DNA of 63,484 nucleotides, counting the filler, from Dugesia japonica (Eukaryota), in NCBI GenBank assembly GCA_001938525.1. It is 6 parts of 6 records of this genome, joined end to end, with 100 filler letters (N's around TTAATTAATTAA, not from the genome) between each part and the next. Parts side by side here need not be neighbours in the genome. Positions count along the whole stretch, not along the records: positions 24,535 to 36,012 come from MQRL01533496.1; 5 more parts are not named here. The stretch is one strand, 5' to 3'. Below, one piece after another: positions 17,008 through 36,012 of this stretch. The notes under the pieces were generated by a model. That model was given only the letters and a program-made list of their open reading frames with translations, searched no databases and had not been told where the DNA came from. Numbering within the stretch: position 1 is the stretch's first letter; each line of letters starts with the position of its first letter. Position numbers and translations under genes: made by a program.

Positions 17008-17096
17008 CATTTAAATATAAAAACTTCGATCAAATTTTTTTTTTGTTTTTGATAATAATTCTAATTTTCGACATTGTCTTCGTCAGGAATTGACTA
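17008..17096 (-). mobile_element. Hammerhead-bearing short retroposon, subfamily A (89 bp)
   Basis: 16-bp TSD ttttaatttgtgtatt (16992-17007 and 17097-17112); homologous to the 11-kb copies. Confidence 0.85.
17057..17091 (-). ncRNA. Minimal type I hammerhead ribozyme motif, intact core
   Basis: Reverse complement aattc-CTGACGA-A-GAC-aat-GTC-GAAA-at-TA-gaatt: helix I 5 bp, helix II 3 bp, palindromic helix III AAUU, UUA cleavage triplet. Confidence 0.8.
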
Positions 17097-24534: not shown

Positions 24535-24571
<37 letters not shown>

Positions 24572-24572
24572 C

Positions 24573-24957
24573 CAGTAGCGTGGCCAGGAATATATGAAGG
24601 GGGGGTTTTAAATTTTTTTATATTTAAATTATTGTTTTTTTTGTTTTTGTTTACCAACATAAAACAACAAAGACGCCAAGTATTAAATAATGAGTTCATT
24701 AGCTGACTCTTTACAGTATGGGGACAACGTATGGGACATCAGAAAAAAATAAATAATTATAGTGTACTNNNNNNNNNNNNNNNNNNNNNNNNNNNNNNNN
24801 NNNNNNNNNNNNNNNNNNTAACATAAAACAACAAAGACGCCAAGTATTAAATAATGACGTCATTAGCTGACTCTACAGTATGGGGACAACGTATGGGACA
24901 TCAGAAAAAAATAAATAATTATAGTGTACTAAGAGTACAGACAAGTGTCACAGTATT
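24573..24957 (+). mobile_element. Terminus of a non-autonomous DNA element; inverted homologue at about 34730-34910
   Basis: CAGTAGCGTGGCCAGGAA..GGGGGGG terminus. Block gccaagtattaaataatgacgtcatta..gacaacgtatgggacatcag is the reverse complement of about 34770-34840. Confidence 0.6.
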
Positions 24958-25790
24958 TCTTCAACTAACACCAAATTGTTATCCGAATACAGATCTTTTC
25001 TGAAATCTTCTTCTACATCATCTTCAATTTTATCATCAACAAAATTTTCGATATCGTCCAAGTCCAAAGCTTCATTAGGAGTAGAATTTATTGGTATATA
25101 AAAACAGTCCGTTACGGNNNNNNNNNNNNNNNNNNNNNNNNNNNNNTAATTTAAAACATCTAATATTTTTCCGTATTTTTCATTAAAGCAGTTGCGTCGT
25201 TAGTGGATGCCATAACATCAATTTTTAAAGAAATGCCAAAGTTTTCTAGCTTAGCTATTTAACNNNNNNNNNNNNNNNNNNNNNNNNNNNNNNNNNNNNN
25301 NNNNNNNNNNNNNNNNNNNNNNNNNNNNNNNNNNNNNNNNNNNNNNNNNNNNNNNNNNNNNNNNNNNNNNNNNNNNNNNNNNNNNNNNNNNNNNNNNNNN
25401 NNNNNNNNNNNNNNNTATATTTTTCAAATTTATTTTGCAGTTCAATACATTTTTCTTTATAAAAGCTGATGATGCATTTTGAAATAGTTATTGGACTTTT
25501 TGGCATTTTATAAACTTTTTGTTGCACATACCATCAACTGCTGCGACTTTTGACAATATTTCATTTAAAGACTGTCTGTTGACAAAGTTCAAAATAGTAC
25601 TTGTTTCAATTTTTTGCTTTTTATGCGGAACATTATTTTATTGATAATTTCACTTGATACCGATTTAGATATAAATATGTTGTGTCGTAACATCAAATGA
25701 TTAATCATAGGAGGTACCACGTGTGGCTTCACCAATTTTATTTTTTCAGTATATTCGAATATCAAATAATAAATAAAAACACGAATATAT
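24958..25790 (-). mobile_element. Deleted second copy of the hAT element at 31492-34602
   Basis: Highly similar reverse-complement matches to about 33140-33300, 33000-33100 and 32420-32825; TATTCGAATA subterminal motif near 25752. Confidence 0.88.
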
Positions 25791-25944
25791 TAGAATATCT
25801 TTATCATAAATTAATTAAGAAAATGTATGTAATAGGCTGTCCAATAATTATATCAACAATTTGCAGGCAGCCTTTAACTCCCGTTTCCAAACTTATCAAA
25901 CTTTAAGTGACGTCCCTAATTTTTTAACACTATCATACGATAAT

Positions 25945-26800
25945 TGATTAAGATGTTTAAAGAAATGGAAGTCGGTGGGGACAGGTATGATAAGTATGGT
26001 GGGTGAGTGAAAGTTTCATTTCATAACTTAAGTAGTTCTTGTACGACCAATCGTGAAAATGTGAACATCCTTTGTCCGGAAGGATAATTGGACCCATTCG
26101 ATTGACTGTTTTGCACTAATGTTTTTGCATATCCTCCAACTGCTCACAGTATAATGTTGCAGTGCTTTTTTCTCCAGNNNNNNNNNNNNNNNNNNNNNNN
26201 NNNNNNNNNNNNNNNNNNNNNNNNNNNNNNNNNNNNGAGTTTCACCTTTTGAAACTGTTTATGGGACTCATCAATTGATAACCATTGTGCAGAACGTTTG
26301 CAGTTATGATAAATAATTTACTTATCGTCACAATTAATGATGAAATCCAAAAAGAGGTCGGTGGAATATCTTCTTAGGAAAGATATTGCTACCTCTAATA
26401 TTACTTTCATTTGGATTTCTGTAAGATCATGCGACATCCATTTCTCCAGTTTCTTGACTTTACCGATCAGCTTCAGATGTTCGAAGGCAGTAAGTGGCAA
26501 AACATGAATCTTTGCTGCTATCTTTGATTCATTTTGCTTTGAGTCTTCCTGGACAATTTGTTTCAAAATATCATCATCAACAGCAGAAGGTTGTTCGGTT
26601 CTTTATCGTTCAGATACTCATTTCCACTTCGGAAATTCTAAAACCATCTTTTCGCGGTACGCTGAATTGCAGTAACATCTCCAAAGCTTTTTTTACATTT
26701 TCAGTTATTTCTGTTACATTGTGAACGAGTTAAAATTTAGGAAGTATTATGAAAAGGGATTCTGTCTATGATAACTAATTCCTCCACTTATAACTAAAAA
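25945..26800 (-). mobile_element. Decayed mariner transposase
   Basis: HLKLIGKVKKLEKWMSHDLTE (WVPHEL), FLDFIINCDDK* (first Asp region), GPIILPDK, HPPYLSYLSPTDFHFFKHL. Confidence 0.88.
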
Positions 26801-27203
26801 GTAATATTATTTTCATAAAAAACCTTTACGATATTTAGAAAACATGGTTGTTAATTATATAAACATAAAAAATCGATTAGAAATAAATATTCTTTGTAGA
26901 TATTCTTGAAATTCTAGACTAANNNNNNNNNNNNNNNNNNNNNNNNNNNNNNNNNNNNNNNNNNNNNNNNNNNNNNNNNNNNNNNNNNNNNNNNNNNNNN
27001 NNNNNNNNNNNNNNNNNNNNNNNNNNNNNNNNNNNNNNNNNNNNNNNNNNNNNNNNNNNNNNNNNNATCCTGAAATTTGGAGTCATATCATCTCAGAAAA
27101 AAACTTAAATATCTAATATTGTTGTGATCTTTTGTTGAAAACTTCGGCTAATACAATATTGATAAAATTATCTTGCTATATAATTAATTATCATCTGATT
27201 TAG

Positions 27204-27290
27204 ATGAACAAGTGGTCATCTTCAATTTATACACACAAATTTCTCATTTATTACGAGCGATCAGACGCAAATTTAATTTGAGTAACGAAA
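27204..27290 (+). CDS. Internal exon of a CXorf65/C22orf15-like protein gene
   Basis: tttag|AT GAA..GAA A|gtaaag encodes EQVVIFNLYTQISHLLRAIRRKFNLSNE and splices in frame over a 46-nt GT-AG intron to the next exon. Confidence 0.72.
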
Positions 27291-27336
27291 GTAAAGTGTT
27301 TTTACACAAATTATTTTAAATCAAATTAATTTTCAG

Positions 27337-27456
27337 CAAGAATAGATCTCATTCACTCTGATGGAAATTTTACAAATTTATCAAAAAAACAATCTGGTGA
27401 TTGGGCTTATATATCTTTACAACCTCGAGAAACCTATATACTATCTCAAATTCAAG
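27337..27456 (+). CDS. Next exon of the CXorf65/C22orf15-like gene
   Basis: tttcag|CA AGA.. encodes (T)RIDLIHSDGNFTNLSKKQSGDWAYISLQPRETYILSQIQ, resembling the family pattern IDL..G..L..A..L..R.TY.L. The donor caag|gtgaag is tentative. Confidence 0.72.
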
Positions 27457-27493
27457 GTGAAGTATTAATTAATTTTTTTTATCATTTAATCAT

Positions 27494-27751
27494 TTATTCA
27501 TTGATTGTGTCAACAAAATCGAGGGAGGCAGTTTGAAAAAGTTTGATAATGTTTAACGGGGGAGCGGAGGGTGATAAATTTAATAAATCAAAACAAAAAT
27601 TAGGTAAAATATTGTTAATTTGTTGGGATGGATAAACATTTGTTGACATAATTTTATAAAGAGGATCACTGAAAGTTTGACAGTTGTTGACAAGGTTGGA
27701 AAGTTGTTAAAAGTTGCCTGAAAGTTGTTGACATAATTAATGGGCAGCTCC
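27494..27751. mobile_element. PIF/Harbinger-like MITE; partial opposite-orientation copy at about 25833-25935
   Basis: Imperfect TIRs ttcattgattgtgtcaaca / tgttgacataattaatgggcagc and G-rich internal tracts. Confidence 0.55.
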
Positions 27752-27961
27752 AAATAAGTTTTTTGCCAATATTGTTATTTAAATAAATATAAAAACCAGA
27801 ATACCTGAAGATAAATATCAAAAATTCAGATAACTAACAAGAAATTAATTTTTTGATGTATTGCTATTTATTAAAATTAACATGTGATTTAAAATGAAAT
27901 ATTTTTACATAGATTGAAATTACAATTCAAATGACTTTTTAAAATTCAATTTATTTAAATA

Positions 27962-28020
27962 CAGTAAAATCCCTCTATAACGCCCCCTTATATATTGCCA
28001 CCCTATATCTTCTGCCAAAA
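27962..28020 (+). mobile_element. Solo pogo/Tigger-like terminal repeat
   Basis: TA|CAGTAAAATCCCTCTATAACG; no partner end found. Confidence 0.45.
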
Positions 28021-29778
28021 TATTTCTTTAATTTTTTTTAACAATTTATTTTGCATATATTTTTATTTTATTATTTATTATCATTTATTTTTACATAATA
28101 TACAAAAATTAATTTAATACCAATAACTATATTACTCCGTAAACATTTTTAATTAAATTATTATTGATTTATTGATCGTAGATAACTGAAAATTGATATT
28201 TTAATTTTATCAAAAAAAAAACAGTGTAACCCAAAATAAACAAAAATGAACCAGATGATAATTTTGGAAATTTTAAAGCGTGTACATTTGATTCAAATGG
28301 CGTAGAATCCAACCTGTATCGGTTTTTGAATACATAATAATGTAACTACATTAAAGCAAACAATTCCACTCAAATTTATATTCATTGAATTAACAATACC
28401 TTAGGACACAAAGTTTATATGTTCTAAAATCACAATTATACGCAGCTGTATTGCTGTATATATAATTTATGATGATTTTTATATTTTTATGAAATTTGTT
28501 TTTGGTAGAATTATTTCAACTTTAAAAAAAGTTTTATTTGTGTTTTAATAAGTATTCAATAAATAGTAATGATTTTAAACAACAAAATAAAACTTGTCAT
28601 TATCCGCCAGTCAGCTTATTGTTGCGGAAAGCAAACACCAAGAAGAAAAAATATATATACACAACAAACAGATCAATGCACGCACAGCATTCATATAATA
28701 CATATATGCAGATACAAAACAAATATCGATCAACCGAGTACCAGCAAAACCCAATCAATAATCCTTATATTGTGTTCCCGGAAATTCAATTCTGTGACAA
28801 TGATTATCTATTTCTAACAATTATTATTGATTATCCAAACAGTTTTATTTTATTTTCATTTTTTTTGTACATTTTACATTTTAATTCTATGAACATTCTA
28901 TCTTTATTTGATTTTAAACATTTTATCGATCCTTGTGTTTAAGCGTTGGACGTTATTTGATATCGATAAGAATAATACAATAATATCAATTTTTGTAAAA
29001 GTAGGCTTGTTTTTATTAATTATAATATCTATTTAAATATTTTGTAAAAATTTTTATAAATGTAGGTTTATTTTTATTTTTAAAATTTGTATTTTCATAT
29101 AACGTATGTATGTATTGGCTGGGAATTGATATAAATAGTGTTCAATTTTGTAGAAATTTCACCCGTTTTTATAATCTTAAAAAGATCTATCACTTCTAAA
29201 GTAGCAGATCGTAGATTAAATTAAAAACGCCATTATTGTTGTGAGTATATTTTGAAAAGCGAGTTAAAATTTTTGTGCTTTGATTAGAAATTGTTTTTTT
29301 TTAAAAATCATTTTTAAAAAATTGAAAGTTTCAAATTAATTAAGAAGTTAAAATAATTATTTTGAATAGAAGTTTGATCTAAAAGTTTTCAATTGTTATA
29401 AGTTTACTATATAGAATATTTATAAAAATATCATTTTATCTAAAATAAACATACTTAGGTATAGGAAATTTACAATATATATTTGGATATGAAAAATACT
29501 GATTAAGCTCACGCAATTGTCGAAGAATCCCAAAGTCATCTCAACATTATCGAAACAACCATGTTCTACCGCCACCACTGCTAATAACAAAAAAATAAAC
29601 GTTTTTAATGTTTATTTTCATTTTAATTTTCTTTTAAATTTTCGACAGTAATATTGGTTTAAGTAATATGAACTACGGTAAAAAAATTTAACAAAAATTT
29701 CAACTAAAAATTGATAAAGAATATTTTGATCTGTTAATTTCTTTTACTCTTATTGGATATAATAAGATCAATGGATAA

Positions 29779-29831
29779 CAATTGCAATTATTGCNAGAAT
29801 AATTGTTGGACATAACCATTGATCGTTTTAA
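29779..29831 (-). mobile_element. Tail-only insertion of the hammerhead retroposon family (53 bp)
   Basis: Matches about 11030-11090; perfect 12-bp TSD atcaatggataa (29767-29778 and 29832-29843). Confidence 0.85.
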
Positions 29832-30551
29832 ATCAATGGATAAGTTCAAAAATGTTTTAAGAAAAAATCATAATTGTAGAATAAGCAATTTAAAAATTTA
29901 TTGAAACTAATTTAATGTTTTTTTAATCAATACTGTAAAACATGCTAAATATGTAAAATATTTGAAAAACTTTGAAGAAAAAATATAATTAAAAAAAATA
30001 AATTATAAGATTTTTTTATTAATTCAAAATATTTTAAAATTCATGAACATTTAAAAATTTTACCACTGTTTTTAACAGATTCAACAAATTTTTACTTTAG
30101 CTTTTAACTGCTTTCCATTTAGTATTCAATATTTCCGAATTAGAAATATTGTTTTAAACATAACTTTTATTTGTTAACCATGAGTTAATCTTCACAATTA
30201 TAGAATATGANNNNNNNNNNNNNNNNNNNNNNNNNNNNNNNNNNNNNNNNNNNNNNNNNNTATTTGAAAAACTTTGAAGAAAAAATATAATTAAAAAAAT
30301 AAATTATAAGATTTTTTTATTAATTCAAAATATTTTAAAATTCATGAACATTTGAAAATTTTACCACTGTTTTTAACAGATTCAACAAATTTTTACTTTA
30401 GCTTTTAACTGCTTTCCATTACCTTCAACATTTAGTATTCAATATTTCAGAATTAGAAATATTGTTTTAAACATAACTTTTATTTGTTAACCATGAGTTA
30501 ATCTTCACAATTATAGAATATGAAAACAATTCTACCTCTTATTTTATAATC

Positions 30552-30810
30552 CCGTGGTTTTCAAACTGGGCACTACGAGAATTTTCCAATATTAGAAGTA
30601 GTAAATTAAAGGGACAAATAAAAATCCGTTGACTTATGCTTGCAATCTGTTGTGGCACCAAACTATAAACGAAGAATTAATAACTGGGAAAGATTAAATT
30701 AACGCATAAATTAAAAACATGCAAAATAGATCAATATTTTGATTTGGTGTAGCGTGGAAAAATCTTGATGTATCAAAGGCACCGCGAACCAAAATTTTGT
30801 CAGTACTCTA
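30552..30810. mobile_element. Degenerate hAT Charlie-type MITE
   Basis: C(c)GTGGTTTTCAAACTGGG start and GCACCGCGAACCAAAA end motif. Confidence 0.45.
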
Positions 30811-30957
30811 TATTTNGAAATTTATATTTTGTATTAATTAGATTTCTTAGAAAAACAAATTATTGTGATATCTATTCTAATATCTAGCATACTATTATAT
30901 AACATTAAAAGCCGAAATATAAAAATAATTTTTAACACAAATGCTGTTTTTGTTTAA

Positions 30958-31178
30958 CATATTGAACGCCGTAATGTTAAAAATAATTTTTACTCCCAGG
31001 CTAATCTATTTTTTCTTTTAATTAACTCAAAATAAAGTTTAAAAATAATAATAATATTGCATTGATTTTCATTTATTTTTTGTCTAATTATGTCTTTCAA
31101 TCGTGAATCATCCGTGCACCACGCGGCCTAGAGCAAATCTACTGTGAATCATACGTGATTCACGCGACACTCAACGTG
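30958..31178. mobile_element. piggyBac-like MITE
   Basis: TTAA|CATATTGAACGCCG ... CGACACTCAACGTG|TTAT, with subterminal palindrome GTGAATCAtacgTGATTCAC. Confidence 0.55.
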
Positions 31179-32251
31179 TTATATTGTTTATTGTTTTGTA
31201 ATCTGTTTGGTTTTTTTCTTTAATAAGACTATCTTTAATATAAATAAGACTATCTTTTATATAAATACTTAATTTTTTGTTTTTAATTTAAAAACTTTTT
31301 AGGATACTGTTTTTAAATACGAGGCATTGTACTAGTTATTGATAAATAAAAAGAATAGCCATTGATAAAGAATGCGTCCAAATATCAAACGAAATGAGTG
31401 TTTTTGATTGGTCATCAATTAGAAAATGTGCGAAAGCATAAATAACTATATAGCTTGGCGTATAAAAAAAATTTCATTTTTTGATGCGAATTAGAAATTC
31501 CAAACTGAATATTCGAATACTTGATATTCGAACATATTTATGTGTTAATTGACTATTTGATATTCGAATCTTTGGACAAAATATTCGAATATTATTGAAC
31601 GATACAAAATTATAAATTGTAAAAATTCAATCAAAGTAAGCTTTGAAAAAAGTTTCAAAGAATCTCATTTTGAATTTTCCTAATGTGTTTTGTGTGACAT
31701 TATTTTAGTTGGCTTTTGAAAAACAGTAGAAATAAGTTATTGTTATTGTAATTAAAAATTTTAATGATTAAAATAAATCGTAATCAATTGTAAAATTAAT
31801 TTTTTTGGATATTTCTTATATTTGAAAGGTAAATTAAATTTTGTTAGATTATCTTACATAATTACTATTAGTTAAATTTATAGTCTCACAAGTCTCCATA
31901 AATTGTTTATTGATTATTACAAGTCTTTTCTTAAAAATAAAAATATGAAATAAAAATTCACAAATTTCAAACAAATAATCTGAGAAATATTAATAAAATA
32001 TTTTCAAAAATATTGGTTTTTTAAACTCATTTTAGAAAATAATTTTTTAAAATTTTATAATTTAGCACATTGTAAATTTTAACTTTAATTTAAAATATCT
32101 TTGTTTTACATATATATTTATTTATTTTTCAACCTTATAATTTTTAAACTTTTATATTTTAAAAATTTTAAAAAACCAATCTTAATATTAAATATATAAA
32201 TTAAAAAATCTCAGACATCAGAAATTCATGAATCGATACTCACAATTACAT

Positions 32252-32352
32252 TCATTTAATATAAAAGTTTAGATCAAAATTTAGGTTTTAATTATTGATA
32301 TTGGATAACAATTCGATATTTCGACCTTGTCTTCGTCAGGAATTGACTTTTA
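32252..32352 (-). mobile_element. Hammerhead-bearing short retroposon, subfamily B (101 bp)
   Basis: 11-bp TSD cacaattacat (32241-32251 and 32353-32363); same end as the other copies. Confidence 0.85.
32309..32345 (-). ncRNA. Minimal type I hammerhead ribozyme motif, intact core
   Basis: Reverse complement caattc-CTGACGA-A-GAC-aag-GTC-GAAA-ta-TC-gaattg: perfect 6-bp helix I, 3-bp helix II, palindromic helix III AUAU, AUC cleavage triplet. Confidence 0.85.
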
Positions 32353-35300
32353 CACAATTACATATTTAGATTTTTAGCCATGTCAATAAAATCCGAGGTG
32401 TGAAAGTTTTTTAATAAAGACGAAAAAAATTGGTGAACCCACATGTAGTACCTGTAACGCGAAAGTAGGATGTTGAAGTTCAACCACTCCTATGATTAAT
32501 CATTTGATGTTACGACACAACATATTTATATCTAAATCGGTATCAAGGAAAAATTATGAAGAAAATAATGTTCCGCAGAAAAAGCTAAAAATTGAAACAA
32601 GCACTATTTTGAACTTTGTAAACAAAACAGTCTTTAAATGAAATATTGTCAAAAGTCTCAGCAGTTGATGGTGTGTCAATCCAAGCAATAAGCAAATCCG
32701 ATGCAATAGCTGGGTACGTGCAACAAAAAGGTTATAAAATTCCCAAAAGTCCAATTACTATTTCAAAATGCATCATCAGCTTTTATAAAGAAAAATGTAT
32801 TGAACTGCGAAATAAATTTGAAAAATTTAAAAAAGCAAATCGTAAATTTGCTATTAATGTGGATGAATGAACAGATTGCACTATCTTACGTTTTTTAAAC
32901 GTAACAGTTCATGTAGTTTGAATGGAATCAAGTAAAGCTGGGTTTAACGGAAATAGTTACGCAGTGAAATGAAGAAACTATTAAACATTCATTTGAAGCT
33001 AAGCTAGAAAACTTTGGCATTTCTTTAAAAATTGATGTTATGGCATCCACTAACGACGCGGCAGCTGTAATGATAAATACGGAAAAATATTAGATGTTTT
33101 TTATCATCTTGGCCATAATCATGCACTCAATTTGGCTGTAACGGACTGTTTTTATATATCAATAAATTCTACTCCTAATGAAGCTTTNGACTTGGACAAT
33201 ATCGAAAATTTTGTTGATGATAAAATTGAAGATGATGTAGAATAAGATTTCAAAAAAGATCTGTATTCAGATAACAATTTGGAGTTAGTTGAAGAAAATA
33301 AAGATGTTGTGACATTGAGTATTGATTTTGGTCAAATTACTAACAGGTTAAGAGATGGTAAAAGAATGCTTAAAAAAATCATCTTTAAAGCACTCTATTT
33401 TGCCACAAAATATAGTTCGAAAAATGGGGAAAACTGAAGTTAAAATTAGACATCAAAACAAGATGGAATTCTTTGATTGTAATAATTTGACGATTTTTAA
33501 TTTTATCAGAATGTGTCAATAAATCCTTAATGGAATTGAATTTAGAACCAATTTCAAACAATGATACAAAACCTTGTTGATGTTCTTTCACCAATTCAAA
33601 CTGCCATTAGTGAATATAGCAAGAATGATACAGATCTCATAACAGTTGAGGGGTTTACAAATTTTTGTTTGAAAAGTTGCAACGTATCCAAGCTGCTGCA
33701 TGCTATTAAAAGAAGGATAAAATAAAGAAGAGATCCAGTTTTGATTAACTTATTGTTTATCTACATGGTGGAAATGTACCAATTTCCAACGATTACTTTC
33801 AATATTCTTCAAAAAATGCAGCAATTTCATAATCTGAAAAAATTATAGAACAAATATATCTAAAAATATTTATTGAAGAAAGTAATAATGATAATTTACG
33901 TCATCTTTAACTGATGATGTAATAGAATCATCACCACAAACTGGATTACGAAAAGAATTGCAAAATGCAATAAGTTCCATTTCAGAAAAATGTAATGTTA
34001 ATAATGAAACAAATAATAAATATAATGAACTGGAAAAAGAATTTCTCCAATTGGATTTATTCAAAAACGGTCGGTAACGCTGGATATCTTATAAAACGCA
34101 TTAGTTACTATACGACATATCTCAACAGCAACTGAAAGAGTGTTTTCAACAGCAGATGCAATAAAATCGAAAAGGAGATCAAAGTTAAATATAGAAACTT
34201 TCAATTCCATTCTATTTCTAAAATATATGTTTAAAAGTAATAAATTAAATATATAAATAATTAATAGTCTTGTGCGATCTTCCTTTTATTTAATATTTAC
34301 TTTTATAGCTTTTATTAAAACTTCCCGTTTTAGATACAACTATCCTTCGTGTCACTGATTAATCACTAACTGATATAAATCAATATAATCAGTTTTGACG
34401 TTCGCATTAGCAGATACCTCTATAACAAAAGCAATAAAAATATTAAATTGTTTTTTAATAATTTTATTACTATAATATTTATTGTTGATAATCTTTTTTG
34501 AAGTTTTAGTAAATTATTCGTATATTCCAATAATCGAATATTTTAAAAAATTTTCTATTCGTTATTCGAATAGTTGAAAACCTTGAATAGTTGGAATGTC
34601 TAATGCGACTTCATGTGCCTAAAAAAGGTCATCCACTTAAATCATAAAAAAACAAAACAATTGTTATATAAAAATTGTTTTTCCTACTTTATTCCCTTTT
34701 TATTATTATTTTATTAATTTATTTACAGTAATACTGTAACACCTGTCTGTAGTCTGTACTCTCAATACACTGATGTCCCATACGTTGTCTCCGTACTTTA
34801 AAGAATGAGATAATGACGTCATTATTTAATGCTTGGCGTATTTGTTGCTATATGTTACTAAACAAAAACAAAAATTTTGATAAAAATTTAACCCCCCTAC
34901 ATATATTGATATAGCATATTGTCGAATTTGAAAAATTGCATATTAATAAATACTGAAGTTATAATAACTATAAGTCTGGATAAATCTTTAAAATGATACT
35001 GTTTATTTAATTATTTTTAGGCTAATTAGGAGAAATCTTTGAATTTATTATTTGAATTACAAATATTTTACATGGAGTAAGACCATCAAATAATGATTTA
35101 TTTCAAAAAATCATTGATTTTTTCCAACAATTATGCAATTAAATATGCTTGGAATAAATACTTTGTTCATATACTGATTATTATTTAAAAATTAAATTAA
35201 ACACTAGTAGTAATTATCTTTAATTACATTATACTATTTTAAAATGTTTGAAGAACGCACTAACGTTATTTTATAATCAGCGTTTTCACTTAAGCATAAC

Positions 35301-36012
35301 TGATATTTGTTGAAATTGAATTTTATTAGTTTCTGCGTTAATGTTATTTAGCAATTATAACGTTTTCATCATATCAATGGATTTTAATTTTTTTTTTCAA
35401 ATTATTTGTTCGAGAAATTTAGAAATAATTTAAAAATTAATTATATATAATTTTATAGATAAGTAAATGAAATTTTCAACATTTTAATATTAAAAGTTCA
35501 GTTTAATTTGAATTTATTTATGAAATTTTAGATACTCGATAAATATTTTGAAATTAAAAAATATATTCTCAAAACTTATTTAATAGAAAAATTAAAAGAA
35601 GAATTCCAATCATTTATATGAATTATAAGGAAATATCCTAAAAATATAGAACATTTTTTTTGTTTATATAAAGAATTAAAAAGAAGTAGGTGTTTAGGTA
35701 ATTTCGATACCAGTTGATTGACAGGTCACTTTAAACCTCATTACGTAAACAACAATAGCTGTGAAAATTCTAAATTCACATCTTAATGTAAAAATTTTTT
35801 TTATTTTTTAATTGAGAATTTTCACANATTATTTTTTATTGGTGTANGAATTTTCAATTAAAGATTCTTATGAATTTTCACACCTTAAAATAAACATTGA
35901 ATTTTTTATTATTTATTTTTAACAGTGTTAATTTTAACATTTCAAACATGATTCCGTGAGAAATTTCAAGCGTTTTTTAATGCTATAAAATTAAAAAATT
36001 TCGTAAGGCATA

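What the first reader, a model, noticed from the sequence alone, without database searches (positions are those of the whole stretch)
32309..32345. Intact minimal hammerhead with helix III covariation between subfamilies
This copy reads caattc CUGACGA A GAC aag GUC GAAA UA UC gaattg. The 17057-17091 copy reads aattc CUGACGA A GAC aau GUC GAAA AU UA gaatt. Helix III is too short to fold alone but is palindromic in both (AUAU vs AAUU), a double change that keeps self-complementarity. The cleavage triplet remains NUH (AUC vs UUA) while downstream sequence differs. This fits selection for a dimeric double hammerhead, as known for other minimal animal hammerheads.
Basis: partly seen in the sequence, partly recalled or inferred. 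Interest (0 to 1): 0.78.

Follow-up and report, generated by a model that had tools for sequence, protein, structure and literature searches.

The report
Solo Penelope-type minimal hammerhead motif
A 37-base sequence on the minus strand is a complete, non-random match to the "minimal" hammerhead ribozyme already described in animal Penelope-like retrotransposons; here it is a single copy on a small insertion inside a decayed DNA transposon, so it is a new example of a known kind.

Summary
The motif is real. On the minus strand, 32345->32309 reads caattc-CUGACGA-A-GAC-aag-GUC-GAAA-UAUC-gaattg. It has every conserved hammerhead core base, a 6-bp helix I, a 3-bp helix II closed by G10.1-C11.1, an extra A after A9, and a loop-less self-complementary helix III (AUAU). 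Descriptor scans of 20-30 Mb of composition-matched random sequence gave 0-1 hits, so at most about 1e-3 are expected in this piece.

These features are the published hallmarks of the min-HHR of Penelope-like elements (Cervera & de la Pena 2014), which are thought to act as dimers. The kind and the proposed mechanism are already known.

New here is the context. The motif lies 4 nt inside a 484-bp segment (31866-32349) flanked by a 12-bp target-site duplication. A paralogous hAT copy from a public assembly lacks that segment. The piece has no RT/endonuclease ORF, no second hammerhead and no tandem array. No Rfam family reaches threshold.

I could not test it, because no sibling copy turned up in any searchable collection.

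Verdict: a genuine but ordinary Penelope-type minimal hammerhead, probably a relic.

The parts
32309..32345 (-). Complete type I minimal hammerhead motif (37 nt): helix I 6 bp, CUGACGA, bulged A, helix II 3 bp with AAG loop, GAAA, loop-less palindromic helix III (AUAU), C17
   Evidence: Sequence read. It is the only descriptor hit in the piece. The 37-mer alone folds into helix I plus helix II.
32333..32339 (-). Core box C3 U4 G5 A6 C7 G8 A9 (CUGACGA), followed by an unpaired A at 32332 between A9 and G10.1
   Evidence: [quoted passage not shown]
32323..32331 (-). Helix II hairpin GAC-AAG-GUC with G10.1-C11.1 as closing pair
32315..32322 (-). G12 A13 A14 A15.1 U15.2 A16.2 U16.1 C17. The bases AUAU (32319-32316) are self-complementary. 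Predicted scissile bond is 3' of C17, between 32315 and 32314.
   Evidence: The cleavage position is inferred from hammerhead numbering and was not measured.
31866..32349 (-). 484-bp segment carrying the hammerhead 4 nt from its minus-strand 5' edge. It is absent from a paralogous hAT copy (L019). It is composite and very AT-rich, and holds a roughly 237-bp foldback at 31979-32215.
   Evidence: Collinear BLAST pieces between window and L019 overlap by 12 nt in L019. Sequences and alignments. Foldback from the self-BLAST.
32350..32363 (-). Target-site duplication, upstream copy (ATGTAATTGTGTAA)
   Evidence: Alignment to the empty site in L019, ATGTAATTATGTAAG.
31853..31866 (-). Target-site duplication, downstream copy (A-GTAATTATGTAAG). 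The 12-nt core GTAATTRTGTAA matches the upstream copy at 11 of 12 positions.
32241..32251 (-). Third copy of the target (ATGTAATTGTG, identical to the upstream copy). It marks off a 101-nt hammerhead unit (32352-32252) from the rest of the insert.
   Evidence: The two-event or complex-insertion interpretation is inferred.
31506..34907 (+). Decayed hAT-like DNA transposon copy B, which hosts the insertion. The hammerhead is antisense to it.
   Evidence: Inverted homology to copy A at 24589-25800. Pfam Dimer_Tnp_hAT E 6e-4 at 34095-34253. Hermes transposase C-terminus E 2e-3. Related hAT genes in L020.

Best explanation
This is a genuine hammerhead-class motif of the 'minimal' type carried by Penelope-like retroelements (PLEs) and their non-autonomous derivatives. 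It arrived on a small retroelement-style insertion flanked by a target-site duplication, which landed inside an already resident hAT DNA transposon. If transcribed from the minus strand, helix I and helix II can form. Helix III has no loop, so a monomer cannot complete the three-way junction. Two copies would pair through the self-complementary A15.1-U15.2-A16.2-U16.1 tract and swap their 3' helix I strands, giving two active sites that each cut after C17 (between 32315 and 32314). By analogy with studied PLE hammerheads, this would be slow and probably protein-assisted. At this locus there is no partner copy and no reverse transcriptase or endonuclease gene nearby, and the flanks favour a competing fold. 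This copy is therefore most likely an inert relic of a 5'-truncated or non-autonomous element. Shown here: the motif, its non-randomness, the insertion with its duplication, and the solo context. Inferred: PLE origin, the dimer mechanism and the cleavage site.
For: Exact motif. At most about 1e-3 chance hits expected in the piece. Control matches elsewhere lack helix I. [quoted passage not shown] The fourth, consensus families with covariation within a genome, cannot be tested on one copy. That paper also reports that most genomic min-HHRs are single, dispersed motifs probably from truncated PLEs. Insertion with a 12-bp target-site duplication relative to the empty paralogous site in L019. PLE hammerheads lie near element 3' ends and PLE copies are usually 5'-truncated with complex insertion structures (PMC8557442). 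Here the 101-nt unit holds the hammerhead with 57 nt downstream of it. The mariner and hAT fragments are consistent with an animal genome but do not prove one.
Against: No PLE reverse transcriptase or GIY-YIG endonuclease remnant anywhere in 11.5 kb, so the PLE link rests on motif architecture alone. Helix II (3 bp) is shorter than the 6-8 bp described for schistosome and Drosophila PLE hammerheads. No sibling copies could be retrieved, so family membership within this genome is not shown independently. The insert is composite and its true element boundaries are uncertain.
Confidence: 0.72

Rival explanations
1. The hammerhead belongs to a short non-autonomous element that is not PLE-derived in any direct sense. 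Examples would be a monomer of a non-LTR retrozyme or a SINE-like hammerhead element such as the schistosome Sm-alpha type, mobilised in trans.
For: The unit marked off by repeated target copies is only about 101 nt, and the whole insert has no ORF. Animal hammerheads are common in small non-autonomous repeats (PMC7229834). A 2026 preprint argues that such retrozymes derive from PLE pLTRs anyway.
Against: Retrozyme hammerheads are canonical type I with loop 1-loop 2 contacts and sit in tandem arrays of 150-450 bp units. Here there are no such loops and no tandem array. No tRNA-like promoter region was found. The bulged base after A9 and the loop-less palindromic helix III are the PLE min-HHR signature.
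Confidence: 0.13
2. The copy is part of an actively selected, dimer-forming hammerhead family. Helix III sequence (AUAU versus AAUU) would define subfamilies that pair only with their own kind.
For: The motif is fully intact: 11 core bases and 9 stem pairs. Helix III is self-complementary. Palindromic 15.2-16.2 is a conserved family trait in the literature. AUAU and AAUU would mispair at the two central positions (inference).
Against: The second copy cannot be examined. A single complementary pair has about a 0.3 chance probability. This is a solo copy with no partner in cis. Competing folds are favoured in context, and the modelled double hammerhead is less stable than two monomers. PLE hammerheads cleave poorly even as dimers, and one studied example needs the PLE protein.
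Confidence: 0.08
3. Chance resemblance: an AT-rich repeat that happens to spell a hammerhead.
For: Very many windows were screened by the scan, so rare events will surface. Rfam gives no significant hammerhead hit.
Against: The expected frequency is about 1e-10 per position by hand estimate. There were 0 hits in 30 Mb and 1 hit in 20 Mb of matched random sequence. The motif also carries hallmarks that were not needed to spot a hammerhead, namely the bulged A and G10.1-C11.1.
Confidence: 0.03
4. The motif is a passenger or integral part of the hAT-like transposon rather than of a retroelement.
For: It lies inside hAT copy B, in the subterminal region.
Against: Two other copies of the hAT family lack it: copy A in the window and the L019 copy. 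The L019 comparison shows a clean duplicated target at the edges of the segment.
Confidence: 0.04

Closest known systems
min-HHR of metazoan Penelope-like elements (Cervera & de la Pena 2014, PMC4209133; dimer cleavage in Lunse, Weinberg & Breaker 2017, as cited in PMC6765202)
   Same: Type I topology. Conserved boxes CUGANGA and GAAA. An unpaired nucleotide between A9 and G10.1. A G10.1-C11.1 pair. No loop 3 and complementary 15.2/16.2, so helix III can form only between two copies. No loop-loop tertiary contacts. Mostly found as dispersed single copies.
   Different: Helix II is only 3 bp with a triloop (6-8 bp in the schistosome and Drosophila examples), and helix I is a full 6 bp. No PLE ORF or pLTR can be recognised at this locus.
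Double hammerheads of newt satellite 2 and avocado sunblotch viroid (Forster et al. 1988, as cited)
   Same: Helix III is too weak in a monomer. Activity is proposed through pairing of two copies.
   Different: Those have a short helix III with a small loop and sit in tandem or rolling-circle multimers. Here helix III has no loop at all and the copy is solitary.
Non-LTR retrozymes of animals (Cervera & de la Pena 2020, PMC7229834)
   Same: Type I hammerhead on a small, AT-rich, non-coding mobile repeat with longer target-site duplications.
   Different: Retrozymes carry canonical hammerheads with loop 1-loop 2 contacts in tandem arrays of 150-450 bp units, expressed as circular RNAs. None of these features is present here.
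Poseidon PLE hammerhead of Anolis carolinensis (PMC11167929)
   Same: A PLE-borne hammerhead lacking a stable helix III.
   Different: There the ORF start overlaps the ribozyme, and cleavage was shown to need the PLE protein. Here there is no ORF and nothing was assayed.
Rfam RAGATH-1 hammerhead (RF03152), the best Rfam match
   Same: It shares the core boxes and a short helix II.
   Different: Score is 15.7 bits against a threshold of 56.3. Its alignment forces a long helix III hairpin and a mismatched helix I, so this parse is rejected.

Membership tests
Hammerhead ribozyme (class) | Conserved core: C3 U4 G5 A6 N7 G8 A9, G12 A13 A14, A15.1-U16.1, H17 not G | tested here: met
   CUGACGA, GAAA, U16.1 and C17 read directly.
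Hammerhead ribozyme (class) | Three helices around the core | tested here: inconclusive
   Helix I (6 bp) and helix II (3 bp) are present. Helix III exists only as a 4-nt self-complementary tract that needs a second molecule.
Hammerhead ribozyme (class) | Site-specific self-cleavage 3' of position 17 | not testable with these tools
Rfam hammerhead families (type I, II, III, HH9, HH10, RAGATH-1) | Covariance-model score at or above the curated gathering threshold | tested here: not met
   No hammerhead hit at E<=10 on the whole piece. On 96 nt the best hit was RAGATH-1 at 15.7 bits against 56.3. This is expected for min-HHRs, which lack helix III.
PLE min-HHR | Unpaired nucleotide between A9 and G10.1 | tested here: met
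   A at 32332. Feature listed in PMC4209133.
PLE min-HHR | G10.1-C11.1 closing pair of helix II | tested here: met
   G 32331 pairs with C 32323.
PLE min-HHR | Palindromic 15.2-16.2, no loop 3 or a palindromic one | tested here: met
   U15.2-A16.2 gives AUAU. Weak on its own, about 0.3 by chance.
PLE min-HHR | Located in the pLTR of an element encoding RT plus a GIY-YIG endonuclease, or in a truncated copy of one | tested here: inconclusive
   No RT/EN remnant in 11.5 kb. The motif does sit on an insertion flanked by a target-site duplication, which fits a truncated or non-autonomous copy.
PLE min-HHR | Many copies per genome forming consensus families with compensatory changes | not testable with these tools
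   The genome is not searchable here. Public scans gave no sibling copy, and about 45 kb of a related assembly gave none.
Non-LTR retrozyme | Tandem repeats of 150-450 bp, each with a canonical type I hammerhead and loop 1-loop 2 contacts | tested here: not met
   No tandem array around the motif, no second copy, and no loop 1.

The most novel reading that the evidence does not exclude
The hammerhead family of this genome is under selection to cleave as homodimers. The two central helix III bases would act as a subfamily 'address' (AUAU versus AAUU) that prevents cross-pairing between competing retroelement lineages. That would be a self/non-self rule for ribozyme dimerisation among Penelope-type elements.
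Probability: 0.06. Interest if true: 0.5.

Novelty: new member of a known kind. Interest (0 to 1): 0.2.

Why it matters
It matters little beyond annotation. It adds one more example of the minimal hammerheads known since 2014 to be scattered through animal genomes with Penelope-like elements. The modest added value is a clean empty-site comparison, which shows such a motif arriving on a very short insertion flanked by a target-site duplication. It is also an unusually compact example: 37 nt with a 3-bp helix II. If the genome-wide family really shows subfamily-specific helix III palindromes, it would be a convenient natural system for testing whether these ribozymes must dimerise in vivo. That question is still open, because in vitro activity of PLE hammerheads is poor.

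Tried and rejected
1. Rfam on the whole piece and on 96 nt gave no family at threshold. The RAGATH-1 alignment implies a long helix III hairpin and a mismatched helix I, so I rejected that parse.

2. The other CUGANGA...GAAA hits in the piece (25466, 27805, 32761) have no helices. Two of them are the same stretch of the two hAT copies. None is a hammerhead.

3. A local-alignment search for decayed sibling copies in the piece scored at the shuffled-query level.

4. Public scans for siblings. Viral contigs gave 0. Metagenome contigs gave 0 with a strict pattern and 9 with a looser one. Bacterial and archaeal genomes gave 9. All 18 are GC-rich prokaryotic chance matches with 0-2 bp of helix I.

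5. A full-text paper search for the motif's own letters returned only PCR primers.

6. The look-up of sequencing runs listed 24 runs of a coded organism. No read, expression or RNA-end evidence could therefore be obtained. They were masked in my local BLAST and left out of every reference. My local descriptor scan of the piece did include them.

8. Exact look-up of three window ORFs found nothing on record.

9. About 45 kb of a related AT-rich assembly (L019-L021) contained no hammerhead-like motif. I stopped walking along those contigs because the yield was low.

10. My first idea was an 825-bp insertion relative to hAT copy A with a 10/13 duplicated target. The cleaner L019 comparison replaced it: copy A simply has a larger deletion.

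11. tRNA-like promoter and tandem-array searches near the motif were negative.

12. The 101-nt hammerhead unit shows no similarity to the rest of the insert.

13. The Lunse et al. 2017 paper is not held, so I cite it only through a review.

Full report
**Observation.** The quoted letters are on the minus strand at exactly 32309-32345: caattc CUGACGA A GAC aag GUC GAAA UAUC gaattg.

In standard hammerhead numbering the parse is:
- Helix I, 5' strand: 32345-32340.
- C3 to A9: 32339-32333.
- An unpaired A: 32332.
- Helix II: G10.1-A-C / G-U-C11.1 at 32331-32329 and 32325-32323, with loop AAG.
- G12 A13 A14 A15.1: 32322-32319.
- U15.2 A16.2 U16.1: 32318-32316.
- C17: 32315.
- Helix I, 3' strand: 32314-32309.

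The predicted scissile bond lies between 32315 and 32314. All conserved core bases are present and all nine stem pairs are Watson-Crick. Helix III has no loop. Its four bases, AUAU, are self-complementary.

**Chance.** I wrote a descriptor for this architecture and ran it on the piece and on random sequence from an order-1 Markov model of the piece.
- The strict descriptor found only this site in the piece and nothing in 30 Mb of random sequence, even with helix I relaxed to 4 bp with G-U pairs.
- A much looser descriptor allowed the U3-A8 core variant, any helix II pairs, loops up to 12 nt and palindromic helix III inserts of 0-6 nt. It again found only this site, and one hit in 20 Mb of random sequence. 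That is about 1e-3 expected in the piece.
- A hand estimate from base frequencies gives about 1e-10 per position.
- As an empirical control, 18 exact matches to the core plus helix II in metagenome and prokaryotic genome collections have 0-2 bp of helix I. The window copy has 6.

The motif is therefore real and not a chance product. The palindromy of helix III in a single copy is weak evidence on its own. A15.1 and U16.1 are fixed core bases, so only 15.2 and 16.2 need to be complementary, which happens about 0.3 of the time by chance in this composition.

**What cannot be checked.** Inside 24535-36012 there is no second or decayed copy. I found no sibling copy in viral, metagenome or prokaryotic collections, nor in about 45 kb of a related AT-rich eukaryote-like assembly. 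The covariation claim is left open, neither supported nor refuted.

**What it is.** Cervera and de la Pena (2014, PMC4209133) defined a minimal hammerhead (min-HHR) with no helix III or loop 3. They found thousands of copies in animal genomes, sitting in the flanking repeats of Penelope-like retroelements and, mostly, as dispersed single motifs taken to be truncated elements. They list four features that emerged without being part of their search descriptor:
- Consensus families with covariation within each genome.
- A conserved G10.1-C11.1 pair.
- Palindromic 15.2-16.2 positions.

The window copy shows the last three exactly. The first cannot be tested on one copy.

The proposed mechanism is known too. 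Two copies pair through the palindrome and complete each other's three-way junction. This was first proposed for newt and viroid hammerheads, was shown weakly for a schistosome min-HHR, and was later reported for many PLE-associated variants (review PMC6765202 citing Lunse et al. 2017). In vitro activity is low. One studied PLE hammerhead cleaves only with the element's protein present, and no RNA-seq reads ended at its cleavage site (PMC11167929).

**Rfam.** Rfam has no model that captures this motif. There was no hammerhead hit at E<=10 on the piece. On a 96-nt slice the best match was the RAGATH-1 hammerhead at 15.7 bits against a threshold of 56.3, with an alignment that breaks helix I. 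I reject that alternative parse.

**Folding.** The 37-mer alone folds into helix I plus helix II at -4.6 kcal/mol. With 10-40 nt of genomic flank, the lowest-energy fold is different: a GUCA/UGAC hairpin sequesters the CUGA box (-10.3 with 10-nt flanks). The domain-swapped double hammerhead evaluates at -4.8, against -9.2 for two separate monomers and -15.5 for a fully extended duplex. Nearest-neighbour energies ignore tertiary structure, so this does not exclude activity. It does fit the literature's picture of a weak, helper-dependent ribozyme, and it gives no positive support for efficient dimer cleavage at this locus.

**Context.** The piece is AT-rich (GC 0.18-0.32) and full of transposon debris.
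- A mariner fragment lies at 26321-26602 on the minus strand (Mos1/SETMAR, E 5e-9 to 2e-7).
- Two inverted copies of a hAT-like element are present. Copy A is 24589-25800, internally deleted. Copy B is about 31506-34907. Copy B has a hAT dimerisation-domain remnant at 34095-34253 (Pfam E 6e-4; Hermes C-terminus E 2e-3).
- The hammerhead lies inside copy B, antisense to it.
- There is no reverse transcriptase or GIY-YIG endonuclease remnant in any stop-free segment of the piece.
- There is no tRNA-like sequence and no tandem array near the motif.

**The insertion.** A word search with a hAT peptide from copy B found two proteins on long ENA contigs. Their loci, L019 and L020, are equally AT-rich. 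L019 carries a hAT copy collinear with window 31506-32854 at 77-88% identity, but it lacks window 31866-32349. The two flanking BLAST pieces overlap by 12 nt in L019 (9783-9794, ttacataattac), which is the signature of a target-site duplication.

Direct alignment, minus-strand orientation, shows:
- The empty site in L019 reads ATGTAATTATGTAAG.
- In the window this target appears upstream of the hammerhead as ATGTAATTGTGTAA (32363-32350).
- It appears again at the far end of the segment as A-GTAATTATGTAAG (31866-31853).

The hammerhead therefore rides on a 484-bp insertion and begins 4 nt from its minus-strand 5' edge.

The insert is composite. A third copy of the target (ATGTAATTGTG, 32251-32241) marks off a 101-nt unit at 32352-32252, with the hammerhead near its start and 57 nt after it. 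The rest is 13-16% GC and holds a roughly 237-bp foldback at 31979-32215. Three target copies suggest either two successive insertions at one site or one complex event. PLEs are known for 5'-truncated, tandem or inverted insertion structures, for inserting next to earlier copies, and for carrying the hammerhead near the element's 3' end (PMC8557442; PMC6765202). This fits a heavily truncated or non-autonomous PLE-type fragment, but it is inference. I could not build a repeat consensus or link the unit to an RT-bearing element.

**Reads.** The look-up of sequencing runs listed 24 runs of one coded organism: 20 hold part of the stretch (10 studies) and the 4 raw-read RNA runs were added by species label. 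No holder is confirmed as RNA. There is no evidence here on expression, RNA ends or copy variation. They were masked in my local BLAST and excluded from every reference. My local descriptor scan of the piece did include them.

**Verdict.** The structural interpretation is sound but already published as the defining property of Penelope-type minimal hammerheads. The covariation claim is untestable with what I can see. The most likely account, at about 0.7, is a solo relic of a PLE-type or PLE-derived retroelement inserted into a hAT transposon. It would be capable in principle of dimer-dependent cleavage but is probably inert at this locus. It is a new member of a known kind, and interest is low.

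Noticed in passing
window 26321-26602 (-): Stop-free 94-aa segment similar to mariner transposases: SETMAR E 5e-9, Mos1 E 1.6e-7 (residues about 65-158). Pfam gave no hit at E<=1. It is a decayed mariner copy.
   Followed up: partly
window 24589-25800 and 31506-34907: Two inverted copies of a hAT-like element, 70-85% identical. Copy A lacks about 33298-34718 and 31601-32425 of copy B. Copy B has a 35-nt stretch (about 32451-32485) absent from copy A. No clear terminal inverted repeats were seen at the homology limits.
   Followed up: partly
window 31979-32215: Imperfect foldback of about 237 bp (68% self-complementary), very AT-rich and MITE-like, nested in the same insert as the hammerhead.
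   Followed up: no
window 29959-30210 and 30261-30523: Direct duplication of about 260 bp at 94% identity, separated by a 50-N masked run. This may be a tandem repeat of about 301-313 bp period.
   Followed up: no
window 24656-24768 and 24820-24930: Direct duplication of 113 bp (96%) near the end of hAT copy A, again across a masked run. It matches the other end of copy B (34770-34874) in inverted orientation.
   Followed up: no
window 25466-25484 (+) and 32761-32779 (-): CTGATGATGCATTTTGAAA fits the bare hammerhead core pattern, but it is the same stretch of the two hAT copies and has no helices. It is not a ribozyme.
   Followed up: yes
L020 14687-16698 (-), also in L021: A better-preserved hAT/ZBED-type transposase, split into several called genes (zf-BED, ZBED1 RNase-like, Dimer_Tnp_hAT), on a 184-kb contig of ENA assembly ERZ25073822. 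This 'metagenome' assembly evidently holds AT-rich eukaryote-like contigs related to the window's genome.
   Followed up: partly
window 24535-24568: A (TA)17 microsatellite at the edge of the piece, abutting the end of hAT copy A. The Rfam miRNA-like hits there are low-complexity artefacts.
   Followed up: no
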